Below are positions 1-40,825 of a DNA stretch of 64,000 nt, piece after piece. The stretch is from Pocillopora damicornis. Lineage: Eukaryota. Both the position numbers and the translations under genes were made by a program. The stretch lies in contig NW_020844534.1 in the NCBI RefSeq assembly GCF_003704095.1, forward strand, positions 248,001 through 312,000, in the 5' to 3' direction. Each line of letters begins with the position of its first letter. Position 1 is the stretch's first letter. The notes below the pieces were generated by a model that saw only the letters and a program-made list of their open reading frames with translations, made no database searches and was not told where the DNA came from.

Positions 1-3000
1 AACAAAAGCTGAACAACTCTGACACGGTTATAACCAGCAGCTAGGTGGAGTGGAGTTGACTGACAACAATCAAAGAACAATATTCAAATAATAACCAAGA
101 TAGTGCATCCTTGAGAAACTATTACATGTTATTCAACAAGACTGAATGGGTTGTAACTTGATGTAGTAGTTTCACTAATAAGATGATGTGTGGAGGGGGA
201 GGTAACTGAAACAAAGGACCGAATATTTTTTAAAAATATTTTTCCTTTACATTCTTTTTACACAGGCTTAAGCTAACCTTCCTTCCATCACTTGCATGGC
301 AATTAACATTCAGAGGGGTAAGAAGAGACATGAGCTTCTCTTCATTGCCACTTCTACAAAAAAGAAAACAAACAAATGAAATTAATAATTTGATTGACTG
401 ACACATTTTTACATGTTAACCATTCTCAAAAGCATGTGCACCACAGTAAACATAAATCAAGACAACTTTCAAAAGAAAGGTACTAAACTATTTCAAAAAT
501 GATAATGACTACAATAGCTGTACACTTAAACACATGAAAATCACCATGACAAAGTGAAAAAAAAAGAAAATGAACTAAGCAGCAATCAGAAAGAACAAAA
601 TAAACATTCAAAGACATAGTGCTTGTAGGGCTTAATCGAATGTTCAACCACAGCATTTTTGACTAAGCCCACTTTCAGTAATTAACTTCCTTGTATCACT
701 GTGTTGACATTGACCTGCAAGAGCATCAGTATTATAGTCAAAGGGACTTGCTCACAACCCATTAGGGACCAATCAGGATGGCAATGCAGAGGAAGACATT
801 AATTCATAGTGAATTTATATCTTTAGTTAGAATTTTGCAGACAGCTGGATGTGTTCACTGTCTCTTACAGTGAACACCTTGAGTTCAGCATGAGTTCCAA
901 ATTGATACTAATAAAATTGCATCCAAGTTTCTGTCCTCAGACCACACAAATTTTTGGTGATTTCACATTGCTGTTTTTGCAGAGGACGGCTAGGAAACAT
1001 ACACAGTTTTAAAACGCATGCCCTGAGCTATTGTTCTGCCCATTAAATCTTTTGTTTTGTCATGTTCTTGTTGCCATTGCCATCCCTGTTTACTGAAGGT
1101 CCCTATTAATTTGCATATGACAGTTGTTCTGCATGCACATACCTTGCAGCCTCCAGTAACTCATCCTTCTTATACTCCCCTGAAAGATAAAGGAATTCAT
1201 AAAGGGAGATATTAGTTGAAAAAAACTACACTTCAAGTGATATCCCCAGTAATATCTTAACAATGAAACAAGTAAGAAAAGTATCTGGTTTTACAAGATT
1301 AAAAGAGTAAAAGGGCCAGGGAGTGGACTGGGTACACTATATGGCCTATTTAACATAAAAACCAGAAAATACTTTGTGAAAAACCCATACCTGTCAAAAC
1401 TAGTTTGGCAGATGCTTCAGCAACATCTAGTGCTGTCTTCCCATCTGTATTTCGAATGTTAGGGTCTGCACCATGTTGCAGAAGAACTATTGAATAAAAA
1501 TAAGAATTACAAGTAAAATTCAAAACAATTTTTCTTCCTTTTTTTTTGTGTGACCTGCAAAAAACTGCCCAGAAATAAAGGTCTGCTCATGTGTTACACC
1601 ATCTAACTGTTCTGTTACAAACAATAGTCTGTTCCTGTGTAGTTGTGTTTATGCTCTTTCAAGCACAAAAAACATTCTTTGCTTGTCTGATTTGTTAAAA
1701 AAAAGATTCCCTAATAAAATGAAATATAACTGCAGCAATCACATTACTTTATAATCATCTAGTTTGATTATCCTGAGACCTTATGAATTGTCAATGTCTC
1801 GCAGATTAATTATTTGCCTTCAGCTTTGGCAAATAGTCATCTACTCACTTCTGACCAATCTTATCAGGATATTTTGCTCTGCCTTACATAGTATTTGATA
1901 ATCATTAAATAAAGGAGATAAACAGTTTACATGTGCAATTATACTCATATTTAAGTTGCAAAAAATCCAAGAAACTTCTGTAGTTATTAATAACAACAAC
2001 ACAGACTGTAATTAAGCTTGAATGGATTCAAAGACCACATTTAAGCAAAGTAACCAAGGTTGAAATTACAATCATACAATGATATTTTCTAAACCCTCTA
2101 CTTAAAATTTTTTTTACCACAATTGGCAGTAATGTCACAATCTGACTGGCCAATCTGCTGTTGTAAATAGCAAGAGTACAGACAACACTGCTCACATCAA
2201 CATGTCATGCAATGGTCGTGCACTGAAAGAATCATTTTATTTGACGTCTTTATTTTTAATAAGCAAAACCAAATCAACTGTGGTTCATTCAATGGACCTT
2301 GAGTATTTCAGAGGACCTGGAGTATCCTTAATAAACAACATGCAAAACCAAGGGATCTGTAAGAAAGTGATTTTTACAACAAGCTGCACTACTGACCCAC
2401 ACAAACATCCACTTTTCCTTTCACAGCAGCCTCATGTAAAGGGGTATAATTCCAGTTATCTCTTGAATTAGGATCAGCACCATGTCGCAGAAGTAATCGT
2501 ACCACCTCCGCATGACCAAATGAACAGGCATTATGTAGTGGTATCAACCCTCCTGAAATACCAAATTGATCCAAACCAATTAACAAAGTTACATTTACAG
2601 AAGATTCATAAGGAAAACTGATTGACTAACCATTTTGCTCTACATAAAAGAAAATCAATAAATGACTAAATTTCAGGCAAATGGTCACGCAAGAGGTAAA
2701 GAAAACAATGAACTGAAAAGACAAGTTCATAGAGTGTAGTTCTGAGCTGTAAAAGTTCAATACCAATATGTTCATATTAAACGGGTATTAACAAACATGG
2801 AATGTTAGTCTTAAGTCATTGACAAGTTTGGAACAATTTCCATGGAGGACTAAAGTTGTCTACAATTGCATTAGTGTTGTTTCACTTTGCTCTAAAATTT
2901 ACTTGTATATTCTCCTATTATTCAGTGAGATGCAAAACTAAAACCAGTGGTAACGTTCTTCCTGATTCAAGCAGTTTGCTTGTTTTTACTTTGATTTCTC

Positions 3001-4926
3001 ATCAGTACATTGAGATTCACTCTTTTTAAATAATTGGAAGTTGCCTTTTTCTATCCTCCAATTGGACTTCATGACATCAGCTTTTTTAGCTTTTTTTTCC
3101 TGTACTCAAATACATGAAGAATATTAATTCTTATAAATATCTACAGGTGTCACACAATACAAACAATAATATTTTTGATTTTGGCTATCCATGATTTTCT
3201 AGATTAAAAAAATTGTATTCAACTGTATCACTAATAAATTCTAAGGGCTACAACAACAGAGCTAAATAAGTCCCTGTTAGGATCAATACTGCAAGGAAAC
3301 ATGGTTCATAAAGAAAACAGCAACATGAGTTATTTAAAATTACAACAAACCACAAGCACACAACCCCAAAATAAGGACAACATCAAAACCAAAAGCAAAA
3401 TGAACCACATCATCAGCATTTTTAAATCAGTACTCTGTAGCATCCCTGCAGAAGAGAACATTTCCCCCACTGGAGTCTCTTTTTCTTTGATCTATAATGC
3501 AACTATGGCCACATCATACTTTGCTGTCAATTACTTTCAGAAGCCATCCAACAGGCTCTCATTAGCAATTCAGCATGAGGCCACTTATATCTTGCAGCCT
3601 CTCTATTCATGCCACAGTTCCTATGAGAGCTTCCTCCTGGCCATGCCCCGTGTCTCACCATCCTGGCTCTGCCCAACAAAGTCTTAAGCCATCTTGGAGT
3701 ACAACCAAATTTGACAAACCAACAAGACCCCCTTAAAAAATATGTCTATGATTACCCAAAAGTGACTCAAGGTAAAAAAAAGTGTAGTACTTATGGGTAT
3801 GGCAAGATGATAAATTGTGTGAAAATGAAAACTGTAATAGTAAACAGATCCTACCATCATCTTTAGCATGCACATCAGCTCCATGTTGCAGCAAGTACTC
3901 CACGACTTCTTTTCTTCCAAATCCTGAAGTTTAGAAGTAACAAGACAAGCTTTACACACAGAAGGAAAATACTCCTCACTTAGCGATTACGTACACTATA
4001 GGACTCTTTCCCTTAGGTACTGGTTTCATGAAAGGTTCTTCAAATCTTACTCCTCAAATCGTCACAATACACCTCTAAGTTCTCTTCATTCCGCCATACA
4101 TGTGAGCTGTCTCTCAGCGGGGGCAAGAAAAATGCATTGTAAAAATTCATGTTCTTTAAAAGTCACAATGAAAGGCCTTTAAAAAGTGCTATTTATACTT
4201 CAAATAACTTAGTTTCGTTTGAACAACTGTCATCCCACAGTTAGGTAAGTAAAGAGGAAGCAGATCACACAGCAAAAAGAAATTACAATCGAAAACAGTT
4301 CAGGATTTCGTAAAATGTCAGCCATACATGCATATCACAGAGTTATCTCTGGCAATAATTTTGATAATTCTGTCCGCTTCGATTCGCTAAAACTAATTCC
4401 ATGTTTGGTTTATTTCAACACGTTACGCAACGTTTCAACGTAAATCGAGAAATCATTATATATAAAATAAACTTTTACAAATCAGCTTCTGTAAAAATAG
4501 AGAAAGCGCTAAAAGTCGAGGTAAAGGCTTGCGAAAGTTTTTATAAAAAGATTACATCCTTACTGCATTCAAGATTACACAAGCTTCTCGTAAATCGCGA
4601 AATTTAACATAGCAGATAACTTCGATCCAAAAGAAATCGATCAGATCATCTGCAAACGAACAAAATGACTGACTTTCTTTCAGAGATGTTGAAATGATGA
4701 GAGCGCCATTTGTTTGTTTTCATCGAATTCGCTTACCTGCTGCAAAGTGTAGCGGAGATGACTTTCTGCCGGCTGTATCTCGGAGATTTACATTAGAATT
4801 GATGTTAACTATTCTTCTGACTTTTGTTACGTCACCATTTCTACAAGCCTCGAACAATTCTCTTCCCCCTTCGCTAGATTCCGTATCAAAGCTGTGACTG
4901 CTGTGAAGAGGCTTTCTTGTCGCCAT
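1..4926 (-). CDS. TNKS: Tankyrase (ankyrin-repeat PARP), 5' part; continues past the window start
   Basis: Exons 4926-4737, 3923-3855, 2552-2397, 1486-1391, 1179-1143, 353-278 and 59-<1 splice in frame with GT/AG sites. They give [135 protein letters not shown], which is the tankyrase ankyrin-repeat-cluster sequence. Confidence 0.97.
764..1104. mobile_element. Non-autonomous DNA transposon (MITE) in a TNKS intron, PIF/Harbinger-like
   Basis: Ends AGGGACC...GGTCCCT are inverted repeats flanked on both sides by ATT, a 3-bp target-site duplication. Confidence 0.65.
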
Positions 4927-35490: not shown

Positions 35491-36862
35491 AGGGCGGAAC
35501 ACACGAGCCGACAATGTGCTTCAGCAGGTCCCACTCCAAATCACCCCTTACGTACCGTTAGCACTGCCTGAAAAACGCGTCGTTGCGACTTGTTTTAAGG
35601 ACAGAATGCTGTCCAGGGGATACAGCTTTTCATGAAAAAAAACCTCATGTCACACGTAGCGAATTGTCGCTGAATGTGTTCTGACCGTCAATAGGCCACA
35701 CTTAGTTCGCTCAAACCTTAAGGAAATTTTAAGATATAACTGAGTAAGGTTAAATATTGAAATAGTAACTTATGACTAAAGAAACAAAAGGAACATGCAT
35801 GTAGGAAAGCCAAAATTGGAATGAGAGGGCAAATTTCAAACGATTTGTCTGTGAGGATACTTTAAATACAAAGGACCAAATTCTTTCAAGTTTACACAGC
35901 CTTCTTGAAAGTTTTATCCTGAACACTCTGAAATCAAGACAGGTATCTACTTTGCCAGATTAAACAATAGGAGTCTAAACCTATCGAAAATTATCCGCAT
36001 TTTAAACTAGGTCCTATAGCAAAAATGAAGAAACAACTCTGCAACGTATTGACGTTAAGTTTGATTTAGCATTTTTCCGTTCATCGCGATGAGTAAAATG
36101 TGGAATAACCACCTCAGTCTTAATTCCAGTAGATTCATCGGACTTTCTATGTATTTGTTAGCACTTCTGGGATTGCAAACCTGGTTTCAGTTAGTTAACC
36201 CTTTCTCACTCAGGATCTCATTAAGTAATTCTCCTTACTGTCTGTCATACAATTCTTACGATGTTAGTTTGGAGAATTTGGTACGGATCAACTAATCATC
36301 CCCTAATTGGTATTTATCTTTGTTCTTATCATTCGCCGGCTTGTTACTGTATTGATGTCGTTCAGAGAAATTCTGTCATGGTCGCTCACGGGAGTAAGAG
36401 CCTTGTATGCTATATCATGTGACCAAGCATGTATATGGCTCAGTTTTTTCCTTTTTTTTAAGTTTTCTCTCAAACGTCACTTGAATTATCAACCGAACAG
36501 AGATTGTATGCCGCATCGTTGTGAATAAAGTATTATCAAATCCTGTCAATTCTGTTATGTAGGTACGCACGAAGCGAAAGATTTTAAAATCTTTTTACGA
36601 GATTTCCAAATCCACGTCATGGGCTGATTGTTTCCTCGTTTTCTATCCCACACTCTCCAATTCCCATAACTATTCTACCATTTCATTCCCGAGCATGTGG
36701 TTGGTTTGATCGACACCTTTACGTACTGTCAACCAATAGGAAGGCGCTATTCCCACGAGTCGAACTTTTCCACAATCAACGCTGAAACTGTTAGAACATT
36801 AGTCTGCTTGAACAGTGCCATTGGTTGGCAACTCCTGCCTGCAGATTAAGTCTTTAATAACC

Positions 36863-39284
36863 ATGAAGCCATTATTCGAATTAACCAATCGTGATAATTT
36901 AACATACTGGAGCACGCGAGCTAAGCGTCTTGTTCATTGTAAAAAATATGCTGAAGTCGAAAATTTGCTGCTTCGTCTACCTAACAGTCCAGAATATCAG
37001 GAGAATGAAGAGATTATTCGGGCAAAAATTGCCCTAGCCTGGCATAGAAAAGACATCCAAGCGGTGTATAAGCTCATAGAGGTAGTTGGACCGTTATTGT
37101 TTACATTTTCGCTTTGATGTGGTACGCTGCGTTTTTTTTTTTGTATCTTGTAGCAGTTGTAAGTTGTTAGTTTCGCGTTCTAATTTCTGCTTGGAATTTG
37201 TTCATATCCAGGAAGGGACATTCTCTCAAGGCGACGATCTTATTGAAATATGGGACGAAGCTCATGTTTATGAAGCAAAAGCGAGAACTGCAGTCCAAAG
37301 ATTTCGCGTGCGACAAAGGTTTGTTTGACAATTTAGTTTATTNNNNNNNNNNNNNNNNNNNNNNNNNNNNNNNNNNNNNNNNNNNNNNNNNNNNNNNNNN
37401 NNNNNNNNNNNNNNNNNNNNNNNNNNNNNNNNNNNNNNNNNNCATAAAAAACAAGAAGAAACAAGGATAGCTAAGGATGGAGAAGATTAAAGCTTGGGGC
37501 AAACAATGAACTTGAATAATTTTTTTTCAGAAATTCATTAAATTGAAATTTGTTCGATGTTCAAGCCGTGACCTATCCCTGGGCACGCCAATTGATACAA
37601 CATCGGCCTTTCTCCCTCGGTGACATAATGAAACTATCCTCGAATTGCGTAAACGCAAACAAGCGATTTGAAACACTTTCGGTGAAAACAAATATAATCG
37701 AAAGAATCAAGAAAACTTTGGAACCGTTTCTGTTATTTTCGTTTAAGCTAAAGACCTGGTTTGCCAACGCCCGAAGACGTCTCCGAAACCGCCACTTATT
37801 AAAATATCCCAAAAAGAAGAAGAAGAATCTTTGGCAGAGAAAGACACTACAGAAAACGAGAAAAGACGTCGCCATATCAGAGAGAAGCGCATCTGCTTTA
37901 TCTCTCAACGCAGCTCAAGGGCAGAAACAACCTCAAAGGTATCAAGCAATCGCAACGATGTTGGCTGTAACTTTTGTTGTCCAAAAAGTCGGTTGTATTG
38001 GTGCAATGAAACACATCGCACATTCCATCTGAAAATGTAATAATTAGAACTATTCACCGAAGTGAAGGTGGCTAGTTTTTGACAAAGCGGCGAGGTAAAC
38101 ATCCACCTCTAGCCACCGTCACACTGAGGTGAATCGTTGCGTCAGTATATACTAAAGAAGTGAGATAATATAGCACAAAAGGATAATTTTAACTCATCTA
38201 TTCCTGCAAAATTTTCGGGCGCAAATTCCGTGAGAGTTGCTTGGAGGCGAATATCAAAGGATATACGGAGTAGCCGATCAGAGCGCGCCTTAAACGATAT
38301 CTGCCGTTTTAGTATATACTAAACATTGAAATATGTGGCGTAGGTTTAGCAACAGGAAATAACCCAACAGTTTTTTAATGTGAATTTAGAAGAAGACAAA
38401 ACAAATAGGAAAAGCGACAAGGAAACATGTCATACAGTCGTAACAGCGCTGAAGAGGCAACTATTGACTAGCAAGGTAATTTGGTACTCTCAACCGAATC
38501 GTAGCTAACGTAAATTGGTTACCGTTAAGAGTGTTAAAGCTGACATTCAAGCGTGAGCACTTCGTCAGAGTGCAGGGGGACATTCTCCATTCGCTCTGAC
38601 GAAGGGCTAGCACTCGAAACGTCCGCTTTGAAACTCTTAACGGTGGCCAATTTACGCTATCAACTCAGTTGATAATACCAAATAACTGCACGACAGTTTC
38701 CTAAGAAACTTACCCTCCTCATTCAACTCTTGACTAAGTTCGAGGTTAATCCTGATTAGTTGAAAAATCTGCCTGCTTGTTCTAACTGGCTAAACGACTT
38801 TGTCGATGTCAGCCTCCGCGCATAAGTCCTATACGACTCAGATTTTATAAACTAAAGTATTAAAAAGAACTTCCGAGTTCTAGATACCCTCAATTTCAAA
38901 ATGGGGCTAAGTGCTAAAAATAACTTTGTAAATGAATAACATTTTCAGCGAGTAAAAAAGTCATTTTCTTGTTACAAGCCTTCAACTTACTCTCACTTTG
39001 AGACAGAAGCTGTGAGATGGCTCACTGGAAAGCTTTTTGTCACCCACAGATTTCAAATCGCTGATATAAAGAGTCAAGTTATGTGGAATAGTATCATGAC
39101 TGACTTTCCAGGAGTGTCCATGGTGAATGGTATTCCACAATTTGCTGCGCCTTTTGTTCCTGTCAACGTTACCGTTCCCTATCAGTTGTCATGGTTACCC
39201 GCTGTACACCCTACTGCATTCTTGCCGGTTCAGTTTCCATGGTCACCCTCTTACGATCAGTCTGATAGGTGGAGTCGTTGTTAA
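36863..39284 (+). CDS. Divergent SIX-domain homeobox protein (ANHX-like architecture); middle exons lost in the assembly gap
   Basis: Exons 36863-37081 and 37212-37318 encode NEEIIRAKIALAWHRKDIQAVYKLIEEGTFS..LIEIWDEAHVYEA..TAVQRFRVRQR, which aligns to the SIX domain. After the gap, exon 37748-37938 gives LKTWFANARRRLRN and splices in frame to a Pro-rich last exon 39050-39284. Confidence 0.75.
38480..38720. mobile_element. Inverted pair of Penelope-type repeats, each with a minimal hammerhead ribozyme-like core
   Basis: CTGACGA-AGGGCTAGCACTC-GAAAC-GTC at 38596-38623, with an inverted degenerate copy at about 38537-38570. Confidence 0.7.
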
Positions 39285-39398
39285 GAGAGTTTGCGAAGAG
39301 TGCCTGGCGGAATCATGCGGCTTGCGTTATGATCACGAAGAGAAAGAACAATTTTAGTTGACGAATGGCGAAGGTTTACATAGAATACAATGTTCCGC

Positions 39399-39538
39399 CT
39401 AGCCTGCGAGTTGTTGGACGCGCGTTTCTCCGCTGGTGGGAAGAATTGAGACGAGTCGGGGCGAGTTTTTTCGGGGTCAAGGCCTCATACTTCCCGCGAG
39501 CGAAGAAACACACGAGGCGTGGCCCTGCTCGCAGGCTA
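39399..39538. mobile_element. Short MITE
   Basis: TAGCCTGCGAG...CTCGCAGGCTA inverted ends; a related copy lies at about 40308-40449. Confidence 0.6.
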
Positions 39539-39870
39539 CGTTCCCCCTTACTTCCTGTCTTATAATTTGTTGGTATACATCTTACGGTGCTTTCGGTAAT
39601 TGTTGAAGTGAATATAAGTCCTTTCATAATCAATGATCGTTCAGTTTTATAGGCTTTTTTTTTTCAGACTTTTTTTTAGACAGTTTTAAATCTAAATATT
39701 CGTTCATCAGTCCCTCAAAAGCTGTCTCGAGCCAGAATAACCGCGGTAGCATGATGGACAGTCTTGACCACAGTTCGTTAAAAAAAAATTCATGTCGAAA
39801 TGGAAATTGATATTTTACTGTTTTAAATCGTTGTGTTTCTTTGTTTTTTTATTCTTAAAAGTAAGAGCAG

Positions 39871-40092
39871 AGTAGTAATAGGTGCCAGTATAGAGGAGAG
39901 CCAATCAGGATCGAGTTTATAGCCTACGTGACTTGAATTGATTGCCGGATTTCCAGATTCCATTCTATCATTTCCAGGCGCCTCCGTGGTTTTAAATCCG
40001 GAAATCCGGCAATTTGATTGGTCAATTCAAGTCACGTGTGCTATTTACTCGGTTCTGATTGGCTCTCCTCTATATTGGCACCCATTACTACT
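39871..40092. repeat. Long inverted repeat (fold-back element)
   Basis: AGTAGTAATAGGTGCCAGTATAGAGGAGAGCCAATCAG...CACGTGACTTGAATTGA-like arm pairs with TCAATTCAAGTCACGT...CTGATTGGCTCTCCTCTATATTGGCACCCATTACTACT over about 70 bp, with an inner TTGCCGGATTTCC/GGAAATCCGGCAA stem. Confidence 0.9.
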
Positions 40093-40825
40093 GAGCACAG
40101 GGTCGAGTTTTTTTTCTTTACTACAGAGACTGTTAAATGTAAATTGACCGAGGATTGAAGCTTGGTGTAGTTACAGTTTACATTTTGTTAGCTTTGCGTG
40201 TTAGTATGGTAAATAGACAGACGTTTGCGTCATCTTTGTCTTTTTTCTTTCGTAACGGCCTTGTTATCTATCAGCATGATCTCGTGACAAGCAGACTGGT
40301 GCAGTGTTAGCCTGCTTGGCTGCGGAAAAAGCGGTAGGTGCGAGCGCAGGGCGCGTTCGTCAGGATCTTTTGATCTGAGTAGATTTAACGATCACGCTTC
40401 GCACTCACATTACTTCCCCACCCCTTCCCCTGCTTTGTACGCAGGCCACATAGGATACAGTGCACTGAGCATTATGTTTTCTCTCACTTCGTTGTCCGTG
40501 CGAAGTCTGAAAGAGGTTAGGGAGTCTTACTCGGTGACGTAACGGTTAATGATAGTCCCCGATTCACCGCGGCTTTGTGCTTCGAGCGCTGGAAGAATAG
40601 CCTCGAACTTTCTCGTGACTTAACGTTTGAAGTTTTATTAGCTCCTTTTAAAGACATTTGGATTGAGATAGTGGAGAAGAAGAGTGCTATCTTCGTTCAG
40701 GTCTTCTTTAAAGCCGTTTATTTTCTTATTGGAGTGTCACACGCGAACACGTCGTTTTCTTTGCTCTAGAAACTATCTTCGTTCCGACCGCTTGTCGACG
40801 GGAACTGCCTATTGTAAAAAAATAC

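What the first reader, a model, noticed from the sequence alone, without database searches (positions are those of the whole stretch)
36863..39284. SIX domain joined to a TALE/Iroquois-type recognition helix (WFANARRR)
Seen: the first two exons encode a diverged SIX domain, while the homeodomain helix 3 reads LKTWFANARRRLRN with an intron immediately before L45. Established: SIX1-6 proteins have WFKNRRQR (K50), WFANARRR (A50) is typical of Iroquois/Mohawk TALE proteins, and vertebrate ANHX combines a SIX-like domain with an atypical WFAN helix. Inference: a fourth SIX-related class or an ANHX relative in an early-branching animal, with changed DNA specificity but possibly retained Eya/Groucho binding. 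Helices 1-2 fall in the N gap, so the link between the two halves is not proven.
Basis: partly seen in the sequence, partly recalled or inferred. Interest (0 to 1): 0.75.

Follow-up and report, generated by a model that had tools for sequence, protein, structure and literature searches.

The report
Coral Six-X gene: SIX domain, Iroquois-type homeodomain
This stony-coral gene is an intact, expressed member of a little-studied family of gene regulators that joins the protein-binding domain of SIX proteins to an Iroquois-like DNA-binding domain, an architecture first reported in a jellyfish in 2012.

Summary
Exons 1-2 (36863-37081, 37212-37318) score as collinear halves of Pfam SIX1_SD (23.4 + 14.8 bits). 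The exon at 37748-37938 starts at homeodomain position 45 with LKTWFANARRRLRN.

The gap question is settled at RNA level. One polyA RNA contig (X1 record 2) carries exon 1, exon 2, 167 unplaced letters, the WFAN exon and the last exon in order. With the GT..AG sites the hidden exon is 172 nt and in frame. Two further studies agree.

A transcript-derived 307-aa protein, 98.6-100% identical to the visible exons, carries SIX1_SD plus homeodomain Pfam hits. I did not read its gap letters.

Orthologues in other corals, a paralogue in this genome, hydrozoan and mollusc relatives all share the architecture. Most (15 of 21) have a TALE-type 63-residue homeodomain, which scores best against Iroquois.

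This is not new. Hroudova et al. 2012 described the family as csSix-X, and P0084 most likely is that protein.

The link to vertebrate ANHX is only a language-model lead, because I could obtain no ANHX sequence. Retained Eya/Groucho binding is not supported for this gene.

Verdict: new member of a known but neglected kind.

The parts
36640..36862 (+). 5' untranslated region
   Evidence: RNA contigs begin at 36640 (X4 record 22) and 36763 (X1 record 2). The only in-frame ATG after the upstream stop is at 36863. Contigs cannot fix a transcription start.
36863..37081 (+). Coding exon 1: N-terminal half of a diverged SIX domain (73 aa), ends in phase 0 after ...KLIE
   Evidence: SIX1_SD 23.4 bits, profile 11-65. 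Aligns to SIX1 in 4egc. 83.6% identical to Stylophora P0031. GT..AG joint to 37212 in X1 and X14.
37082..37211 (+). Intron 1 (130 nt, GT..AG)
   Evidence: Joint 'skips 130, GT..AG (cut +2)' in 2 of 3 RNA runs. It is retained in X4 record 22.
37212..37318 (+). Coding exon 2: C-terminal half of the SIX domain (...IWDEAHVYEAKARTAVQRFRVRQ + 2 nt), ends in phase 2
   Evidence: SIX1_SD 14.8 bits, profile 75-107. 88.6% identical to P0031. Donor AG|GTTTGT.
37319..37747 (+). Intron sequence on both sides of the assembly gap (N at 37343-37442). The gap hides one 172-nt coding exon (homeodomain N-arm and helices 1-2) and is longer than written.
   Evidence: X1 record 2 has 167 unplaced letters between pieces 37210-37321 and 37746-37936. 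X14 records 8 and 9 and X4 record 22 run 43, 138 and 108 letters into it. X17 record 16 has 741 letters left of 37443.
37748..37938 (+). Coding exon (4th in the transcript): homeodomain helix 3 from position 45 (LKTWFANARRRLRN), Lys-rich stretch and linker; ends in phase 2
   Evidence: Homeobox_KN profile 31-40/40, 16 bits. RNA pieces start at 37746. GT..AG joint 37938/39050 in 3 of 3 RNA runs.
37939..39049 (+). Intron (1111 nt) holding high-copy inverted-repeat elements
   Evidence: Joint 'skips 1111, GT..AG'. Inverted repeats at 38501-38664. Summed contig depth in the thousands in bin 38567-38717.
39050..39284 (+). Last coding exon (78 codons incl. first split codon; stop TAA 39282-39284): C-terminal tail conserved among scleractinian orthologues, no Pfam domain
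   Evidence: 80% identical to P0031, 42-47% to Oculina and Desmophyllum.
39285..39788 (+). 3' untranslated region
   Evidence: X4 record 24 runs to 39759 and X14 record 10 to 39788. The end is not fixed by contigs.

Best explanation
The locus is an intact, spliced, polyadenylated five-exon gene of a stony coral. It encodes a protein of about 307 aa belonging to the 'Six-X' family: an N-terminal SIX domain followed directly by a TALE-type homeodomain with the same recognition helix as Iroquois proteins (WFANARRR, Ala50).

Shown: the exon structure, the link of both halves in one transcript, the reading frame across the hidden exon, and family membership.

Inferred: the protein is a sequence-specific transcription factor. 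Its homeodomain should read Iroquois/TALE-type sites (ACA-core sites, recalled from the literature) rather than the SIX/MEF3-type site, while the SIX domain serves as a protein-interaction or auxiliary DNA-contact module.

In this coral lineage the first SD helix and the family's C-terminal motif have diverged or been lost. Partner use probably differs from SIX1/2 and from the older family members.
For: Gene structure and transcript:
- Pfam on single exons shows SIX1_SD in two collinear halves and the tail of Homeobox_KN.
- X1 record 2 (972 nt, polyA RNA-Seq) lies on 36763-37079, 37210-37321, 37746-37936 and 39048-39226, with 167 unplaced letters in between. Contigs of X14 and X4, from two other studies, also leave exon 2 at its donor or enter the WFAN exon at its acceptor.
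- Hidden exon is 172 nt, so 107 + 172 = 279 and the frame is kept.
- P0030 (307 aa, Logan transcripts, 10 member sequences) is 98.6/100/98.4/100% identical to the four visible exons, with exactly 57 residues between them. Its precomputed Pfam hits are PF16878, PF05920 and PF00046.

Relatives:
- Closest other-species orthologue is Stylophora P0031 (84/89/73/80% identity). It has SIX1_SD 50.7 bits, Homeobox_KN 53.4 bits, a 57-residue middle exon equivalent and a 6-residue helix1-helix2 loop.
- A paralogue in the same genome (G000:C2045, no N) has the same four intron positions and phases and carries helices 1-2 in the equivalent exon.
- The family profile versus PDB gives SIX1 at 144.5 bits across SD+HD, with a 3-residue gap in SIX1 at the loop. 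TALE homeodomains score 66-80 bits ungapped against at most 44 bits for any other homeodomain, DUX4 (40 bits) being the best non-TALE one.
- The family HD profile scores IRX 78-86, TGIF 68, SIX 45-60 and LIM 29-30 bits.
- On the SD+HD tree the 21 family rows are split from the 4 coral SIX genes by a 100/100 branch, and the coral group holding this gene's orthologues has 100/100 support.
- Literature: csSix-X (PMC3340352).
Against: - The letters of the hidden exon were deliberately not read. For this gene itself, helices 1-2 and the three-residue loop are inferred from exon length, from precomputed Pfam labels of P0030 and from the Stylophora orthologue.
- Each SD exon alone is below Pfam's cut-off.
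- No DNA-binding or partner data exist for any family member.
- Loop length is not constant in the family: 4 residues in Montipora and Porites, 5 in most paralogues. 'TALE' is therefore not uniformly met.
- HD-only phylogeny cannot decide between IRX and SIX affinity. A tree holding family + SIX together is not rejected (p-AU 0.57).
- Contigs cannot show strand or expression level. Strand rests on the GT..AG sites.
Confidence: 0.88

Rival explanations
1. The two halves are different genes brought together by mis-scaffolding at the N gap.
For: The DNA-like contigs of X17 do not bridge the gap: record 15 ends at 37342 and record 16 starts inside the gap. The written gap length of 100 is wrong.
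Against: One RNA contig (X1 record 2) carries all four visible exons in order and orientation, with 112 and 191 letters on either side of the gap. Two more studies agree. P0030 is one open 307-aa product. The paralogue and 20 relatives have the same architecture without any gap.
Confidence: 0.02
2. It is an ordinary SIX1/2-type gene, as NCBI's automatic names for the orthologues say ('six1-like', 'SIX2', 'SIX6-like', 'SIX3-like').
For: The SD is present. SIX1 is the best PDB hit for the family. Database names appear.
Against: Helix 3 is WFANARRR, not WFKNRRQR. Orthologues have a 3-residue loop insertion relative to SIX1. This genome already has four canonical SIX genes in a cluster on C1766. 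A 100/100 branch separates the family from them. The 2012 paper could not place csSix-X in any Six subclass.
Confidence: 0.03
3. It is a decaying or non-functional copy: a transcribed pseudogene of the older paralogue.
For: Compared with hydrozoan and mollusc members, this coral group has lost the C-terminal motif (0 of 6 rows). Its first SD helix has diverged and it sits on a long branch (0.81). One contig retains intron 1 (X4 record 22).
Against: The frame is open over 307 aa in transcripts. Orthologues with the same exons are kept in five or more scleractinian genera at 42-89% identity, with invariant SD and HD core residues. It is spliced and found in polyA libraries of three studies.
Confidence: 0.05
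4. Origin rival: the architecture arose by fusing an Iroquois homeobox to SIX-domain exons (proposed in 2012), rather than by descent from an ancestral SD-plus-TALE gene.
For: The HD profile scores highest with IRX (78-86 bits against 45-60 for SIX). HD identity to IRX is 40-47% against 33-36% to SIX. The free HD tree puts the family with IRX and TGIF (84/100).
Against: SIX-like sequence continues past the SD into the homeodomain exon (RFPPPxSICPSG against KFPLPRTIWDGE) and into helix 2 (LAxxxGLTxxQV). No exon border separates a 'SIX part' from an 'IRX part'. hhalign finds nothing but the 61 HD columns shared with IRX, and no IRO box. The AU test does not reject family + SIX as one clade (p 0.57).
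Confidence: 0.3

Closest known systems
csSix-X of Craspedacusta sowerbyi (GenBank JF819724; Hroudova et al. 2012, PMC3340352) and its Nematostella relative XP_001633591.1
   Same: SIX domain followed by a homeodomain whose helix 3 has the Irx-type WFAN motif. No IRO box. Not placeable in Six1/2, Six3/6 or Six4/5. P0084, taken to be csSix-X because it carries the RRTN motif the paper names, falls on the same side of the 100/100 branch as this gene's orthologues.
   Different: This coral group lacks the C-terminal [A]xx(V/I)Lx(D/N)LS(T/S) motif that csSix-X has. Its first SD helix is more diverged. Scleractinians have two paralogous groups. Relations among the coral groups, the hydrozoan group and the mollusc group are unresolved. 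I did not see the Nematostella sequence or the paper's supplements (Figures S5, S6 and Text S2 are closed).
ANHX (anomalous homeobox, LOC647589) of mammals
   Same: ESM Atlas clusters named ANHX carry SIX1_SD (98-100% of members), Homeodomain and Homeobox_KN. They are among the nearest clusters: rank 3 at 0.90 for Stylophora P0031, and rank 1 at 0.94 for the SD+HD part of the scallop relative. Paps & Holland 2018 list ANHX with the SIX class.
   Different: No ANHX sequence was available, so loop length, helix 3, intron positions and orthology are untested. Zhong & Holland 2011 found it only in placental mammals and could not classify it.
Canonical SIX (SINE) class: Six1/2, Six3/6, Six4/5
   Same: SIX domain (family profile against SIX1: 144.5 bits over SD+HD). 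The N-arm motif before the homeodomain and helix 2 resemble SIX.
   Different: Canonical SIX has Lys50 and WFKNRRQR, a 60-residue homeodomain (3-residue loop against 6), and SD+HD in one open frame in this genome. This gene has three introns inside SD-HD.
Iroquois (IRX) class of TALE homeobox genes
   Same: 63-residue homeodomain in most family members. Positions 47-55 are identical (TWFANARRR). It is the best-scoring class for the family HD profile.
   Different: IRX has no SIX domain and the family has no IRO box (PMC3340352). Helix 2 is SIX-like. The coral IRX homeodomain is uninterrupted, whereas this family has an intron at 44/45.

Membership tests
Six-X family (SD + WFAN homeodomain; csSix-X type) | SIX domain N-terminal to the homeodomain in one protein | tested here: met
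   The exons score as SIX1_SD halves. One RNA contig links them to the homeodomain exon. P0030 carries PF16878+PF05920+PF00046.
Six-X family (SD + WFAN homeodomain; csSix-X type) | Helix 3 with WFAN (Ala50) instead of WFKN | tested here: met
   LKTWFANARRRLRN at 37748-37789. 20 of 21 family rows have WFAN and one has WFSN.
Six-X family (SD + WFAN homeodomain; csSix-X type) | Groups with csSix-X apart from Six1/2, Six3/6 and Six4/5 | tested here: met
   SD+HD tree: 21 family rows against 4 coral SIX genes, branch 100/100. This was tested with the orthologue P0031, not with the joined window gene. Only this coral's own SIX genes served as the SIX sample.
SIX (SINE) class | SIX domain | tested here: met
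SIX (SINE) class | 60-residue homeodomain with Lys50 (WFKNRRQR) | tested here: not met
   Ala50 in the window. The 4 canonical SIX genes of this genome have WFKN.
SIX (SINE) class | Subclass tetrapeptide at the homeodomain start (ETSY / ETVY / QKTH, as named in PMC3340352) | tested here: inconclusive
   That stretch lies in the gap of this gene. Orthologue P0031 has none of the three.
TALE superclass | Three extra residues between helix 1 and helix 2 | tested here: inconclusive
   Hidden in the gap for this gene. The hidden exon has the same length (57 codons + 1 nt) as in Stylophora, whose loop has 6 residues like IRX and TGIF. In the family, 15 of 21 rows have 6 residues, 3 have 4 and 3 have 5 (counted: g1 6,6,6,4,4,4; g2 5,5,5,5,6 gives four rows with 5; the corrected tally is 14 with 6, 3 with 4, 4 with 5).
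TALE superclass | Helix 3 WFxNARRR | tested here: met
   The motif matches the end of the Homeobox_KN profile. Canonical SIX genes also hit Homeobox_KN, so the Pfam label alone does not discriminate.
Iroquois (IRX) class | IRX-type homeodomain | tested here: inconclusive
   IRX is the best-scoring class (78-86 bits), with 46% identity over 61 ungapped columns. However, trees do not place the family inside IRX with support, and the AU test leaves SIX affinity open.
Iroquois (IRX) class | IRO box downstream of the homeodomain | tested here: not met
   hhalign of the family against 4 IRX proteins aligns only the homeodomain. The last exon has no such motif. The paper reports the same absence for csSix-X.
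ANHX | Sequence-level orthology with mammalian ANHX | not testable with these tools
   No ANHX sequence was returned. There are only ESM Atlas cluster labels.

The most novel reading that the evidence does not exclude
Six-X and mammalian ANHX are one ancient gene family, present in the cnidarian-bilaterian ancestor. It is kept in cnidarians, molluscs and chordates but lost or unrecognised elsewhere. Its ancestral state is a SIX domain on a 63-residue TALE homeodomain with a C-terminal LxDLS motif.

That would turn the 'unclassifiable', supposedly mammal-restricted ANHX into the vertebrate member of a fourth SIX family. It would also give a living intermediate between the SINE and TALE/Iroquois classes. 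Whether SIX homeodomains arose from a TALE-type ancestor by loss of the three loop residues, or IRX lost an SD, would then become directly testable.
Probability: 0.4. Interest if true: 0.6.

Novelty: new member of a known kind. Interest (0 to 1): 0.35.

Why it matters
Homeobox classes are usually treated as clean units. Here the defining extra domain of one class (SINE/SIX) sits on a homeodomain with the hallmarks of another (TALE/Iroquois).

This report adds to the single 2012 description:
- The family has two paralogous groups in stony corals.
- It also occurs in molluscs.
- It has a conserved C-terminal motif and shared intron positions.
- The 'TALE' loop has shrunk from 6 to 5 or 4 residues in some coral lineages, a natural series for asking what the three extra residues do.

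Databases currently mislabel these genes as six1-, SIX2-, SIX3- or SIX6-like. That would mislead studies of the Six-Eya network in cnidarians. For this particular locus the result is mainly a clean annotation across an assembly gap.

Tried and rejected
- HD-only phylogeny (33 rows, 66 columns) put the family with IRX and TGIF. The AU tests rejected neither 'family + SIX' (p 0.57) nor 'family alone' (p 0.29), so I draw no class assignment from it.
- The own-genome SIX1_SD hit on C33 (20 bits) is a false positive: its open frame shows no SD-like sequence.
- Searching the own genome with the paralogue's helix 1-2 exon found only the paralogue itself (1 match, 6 candidates scored). This is expected, since this gene's equivalent exon is in the gap.
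- I first took the family's C-terminal motif for an IRO box. The IRO box proper (KPKIWSLAETATS in P0076, P0089, P0090) is different, and hhalign aligns nothing outside the HD. A resemblance to the extreme C-terminus of one bat IRX3 rests on one sequence and was dropped.
- ANHX: two paper searches and a LOC647589 search gave naming, distribution and an orthogroup table only. Four protein searches returned no ANHX. In one search only the 8000 candidates sharing most words were scored.
- The paper's supplements (Figures S5, S6, Text S1, S2 of PMC3340352) are closed. They may show the csSix-X loop and the Six/Irx tree.
- I did not search the minus strand beyond the ORF list (longest 111 aa, antisense to the Lys-rich exon). 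All joints are GT..AG on the + strand.
- The joined (spliced) coding sequence or protein of the window gene was never built or searched. All searches were exon by exon or used database orthologues.
- The species name is not given by any search. A pocilloporid is my inference from the Stylophora orthologue being closest.
Full report
**1. What is in the sequence**

Reading 36000-40200 and translating the proposed exons gives four visible coding exons on the + strand:
- 36863-37081: MKPLF...KLIE, phase 0.
- 37212-37318: EGTFSQGDDLIEIWDEAHVYEAKARTAVQRFRVRQ plus 2 nt.
- 37748-37938: LKTWFANARRRLRN..., ending in phase 2.
- 39050-39284: ending in TAA.

All borders are GT..AG.

Pfam, searched exon by exon, gives:
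- SIX1_SD 23.4 bits (profile 11-65) for exon 1.
- SIX1_SD 14.8 bits (profile 75-107) for exon 2.
- Homeobox_KN 16 bits (profile 31-40 of 40) for the WFAN exon.
- Nothing for the last exon.

The two SD pieces are collinear. Each alone is under the 27.4-bit cut-off. Exon 1 also aligns with SIX1 of PDB 4egc.

**2. The gap test**

The look-up of sequencing runs listed 9 runs on record as RNA that hold 0.21-0.40 of the sampled words. That is about the share expected for exons plus UTRs. I laid three RNA runs from three studies and one DNA-like run on window:36000-40500.

- X1 record 2 is a 972-nt contig from a polyA library. It lies on 36763-37079, 37210-37321, 37746-37936 and 39048-39226. Its letters 430-596 lie on nothing in the window.
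- With the donor at 37318|37319 and the acceptor at 37747|37748, the unseen exon is 172 nt. Exon 2 (107 nt) plus 172 nt is 279 nt, so the frame runs on into phase 0 at L45.
- X14 records 8 and 9 run 43 and 138 letters into the unseen part from either side.
- X4 record 22 keeps intron 1 but leaves the window at the exon 2 donor for 108 further letters. It does not continue into the 21 intron letters that the window still has.
- Joints 37081/37212 and 37938/39050 are GT..AG in 2 of 3 and 3 of 3 RNA runs.
- The DNA-like run X17 does not bridge the gap. Its record 16 has 741 letters left of 37443, so the gap is much longer than the 100 N written.

Contigs show presence and connectivity, not strand or level.

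**3. The product**

A profile of exon 1 and its paralogue (A2) was searched against 1.84 billion representatives and gave 28 hits at E <= 0.001. Two are unrelated (P0015 bacterial, P0017 a 4841-aa protein).

From these hits, two word-indexed searches returned P0030, a 307-aa protein from Logan transcript assemblies. A local BLAST of the four exon peptides shows it is 98.6, 100, 98.4 and 100% identical to them. They lie at residues 1-73, 74-108, 167-229 and 231-307.

That leaves one split codon plus 57 residues for the hidden exon, exactly the 172 nt seen. The tool's precomputed Pfam labels for P0030 are SIX1_SD, Homeobox_KN and Homeodomain.

Because P0030 is in effect another copy of this gene, I kept its letters out of every print, alignment and tree.

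**4. Relatives**

The closest orthologue from another genus is Stylophora pistillata P0031, named 'homeobox protein six1-like'. It is 84, 89, 73 and 80% identical to the four exons. It has SIX1_SD 50.7 bits and Homeobox_KN 53.4 bits over the full 40 positions. Its equivalent of the hidden exon is also 57 residues.

Further orthologues are in Desmophyllum, Oculina, Montipora (two species) and Porites.

The same genome holds a paralogue on contig C2045 with no N:
- tblastn of the window's exons found SD-like and WFAN-like pieces there.
- The sequence shows the same four intron positions and phases.
- It has a middle exon encoding the N-arm and helices 1-2 (Homeobox_KN 25.9 bits).

More distant members with the same SD + HD layout come from several sources:
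- Hydractinia (P0083).
- Craspedacusta (P0084).
- Four unnamed sources (P0060-P0063).
- A 186-aa ENA fragment (P0087).
- Three molluscs: Mizuhopecten P0066, Haliotis P0085, Solemya P0086.

**5. What kind of homeodomain**

In 14 of the 21 family rows the stretch between the helix-1 W(F/L) and PYP has 6 residues. This is the same as in IRX (5 of 5 rows plus the coral's own IRX) and TGIF, and compares with 3 in canonical SIX. Three rows (Montipora x2, Porites) have 4. Four of the five paralogue rows have 5.

Other comparisons:
- The family profile against all PDB sequences aligns SIX1 over SD and HD in one stretch (144.5 bits). SIX1 shows a 3-residue gap exactly at that loop. PKNOX1, MEIS, PBX and TGIF homeodomains align ungapped at 66-80 bits, against 44 bits or less for all others, MAT alpha-2 included.
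- A profile of the family's homeodomains scores IRX 78-86, TGIF 68, the four coral SIX genes 45-60 and LIM 29-30 bits.
- Mean identity is 40-47% to IRX and 33-36% to SIX, against an IRX-versus-SIX baseline of 35%.
- hhalign of the family against four IRX proteins aligns 61 ungapped HD columns (46% identity) and nothing else. There is no IRO box and no SD remnant in IRX.
- Canonical SIX genes of this genome also pass Homeobox_KN (47-57 bits), so that Pfam label alone does not make a TALE protein.

**6. Trees**

- On SD+HD (25 rows, 195 columns) the family is split from the coral's four SIX genes by a 100/100 branch.
- The orthologue group of this gene (6 rows) and the paralogue group (5 rows) each have 100/100 support, and the molluscs 95/89. 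The order among the four groups is open.
- On the HD alone the family sits with IRX and TGIF (84/100).
- AU tests reject neither 'family + SIX' (p 0.57) nor 'family alone' (p 0.29).
- Rows left out of the trees: P0030 (gap rule), the fragments P0001-P0028, and the MEIS and PBX loci whose HD is split.

**7. What is already known**

- Hroudova et al. 2012 (PMC3340352; I read sections 14 and 15 and the passages naming csSix-X) described csSix-X of Craspedacusta.
[quoted passage not shown] Irx' and no IRO motif.
  - It could not be placed in any Six subclass, and has a close Nematostella relative.
  - They offered the two origins I list: Irx-SD fusion, or an ancient atypical ancestor.
  - They report expression at the manubrium opening, gonads and gastric cavity.
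  - P0084 carries the RRTN motif they name, so I take it to be csSix-X.
  - A full-text search for 'csSix-X' finds only this paper.
- ANHX was named in PMC5094009 (passage).
- Zhong & Holland 2011 called ANHX not easily accommodated in any class and saw it only in placental mammals (passages).
- Paps & Holland 2018 list ANHX under the SIX class in Table 1 (passage).
- I found no paper linking ANHX to Six-X.
- The ESM Atlas places ANHX clusters among the nearest to P0031 (0.90, rank 3) and first for the scallop SD+HD (0.94). This is a lead, not a test.

**8. Mechanism**

Shown: an intact, spliced, polyadenylated mRNA for an SD + homeodomain protein.

Inferred from established knowledge of homeodomains: residues 47-55 are identical to IRX, so base contacts of helix 3 should be IRX-like rather than SIX-like.

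Eya and Groucho. In SIX1 the first SD helix binds EYA, and an eh1-like motif there binds Groucho in some SIX proteins. This is recalled and comes from no call. In this gene the Pfam match starts only at SD position 11, and the corresponding stretch is basic. I therefore do not expect the SIX1 mode of Eya binding to be kept. This is untested.

**9. Verdict**

The finding is real and well resolved, but it is a new coral member of a family already in print. Its wider interest lies in the family (mollusc members, variable TALE loop, possible identity with ANHX), not in this locus.

Noticed in passing
L009 (G000:C2045:131500-139500), minus strand, about 2690-4810: A paralogue of the gene in the same genome, with identical intron positions and phases, no assembly gap and a 5-residue helix1-helix2 loop. 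Its transcript-derived product P0057 (347 aa) ends in ...HAAAQILMDMASK.
   Followed up: yes
C-termini of P0057, P0059, P0035, P0064, P0061, P0063, P0083, P0084, P0066, P0085, P0086: A short motif of the form A-x-x-(V/I)-L-x-(D/N)-(L/M)-(S/A)-(S/T/A) lies 10-27 residues from the C-terminus (further in from the end in Solemya). It is conserved from hydrozoans and corals (paralogue group) to molluscs, and absent from all 6 rows of this gene's own group. Function unknown; it is not the IRO box.
   Followed up: partly
Family homeodomains: The TALE loop is 6 residues in most members but 5 in four of the five coral paralogue rows and 4 in Montipora and Porites orthologues. A loop usually treated as a fixed class character varies within one family.
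   Followed up: partly
window 38501-38664: Nested inverted repeats (47-nt arms 81% complementary, 35-nt arms 74%) inside the last intron. The summed contig depth is 3,700 to 39,000 in all four runs, so this is a very high-copy MITE-like element.
   Followed up: partly
window 39871-40092: 71-nt inverted-repeat arms (89% complementary, 80 nt apart) just beyond the 3' UTR, covered by RNA contigs. Probably another MITE-like element.
   Followed up: partly
window 36151-36301: A high-copy repeat (summed depth 8,000-35,000) about 600 nt upstream of the start codon. Long RNA contigs from the left (X1 record 1, 3644 nt) end in it, so a neighbouring transcript probably ends here.
   Followed up: no
window 37813: One RNA run (X1) has an in-frame AAGAAG insertion in the lysine run of the WFAN exon. 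Several exonic single-letter differences are shared by the RNA runs but not by the DNA-like run, which suggests population or sister-species variation.
   Followed up: no
window 37082-37211: X4 record 22 retains intron 1 while still splicing at the exon 2 donor. Read-through would stop after 11 codons, so this is an unspliced or non-productive form.
   Followed up: no
G000:C1766:171000-275300 (L001-L004): Four canonical SIX genes lie within about 105 kb on one contig: Six1/2-type ETSY, a second ETTY copy, Six3/6-type QKTH and Six4/5-type ETVY. Each has SD and HD in one open frame.
   Followed up: partly
L007 (G000:C33:30339-33557): A 20-bit SIX1_SD hit with an internal stop. The open frame shows nothing SD-like, so this is a chance match.
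   Followed up: yes
P0086 (Solemya velum, 764 aa): This mollusc family member carries an extra PF02198 (SAM/Pointed) label after the C-terminal motif. It may be a real fusion or a merged gene model.
   Followed up: no
L018 (G000:C3883), PBX-like homeodomain: The open frame of the coral PBX-type homeodomain stops being PBX-like right after ...AQ, at what would be position 44. This suggests an intron at 44/45 like the one in this family. I did not check it with RNA.
   Followed up: no
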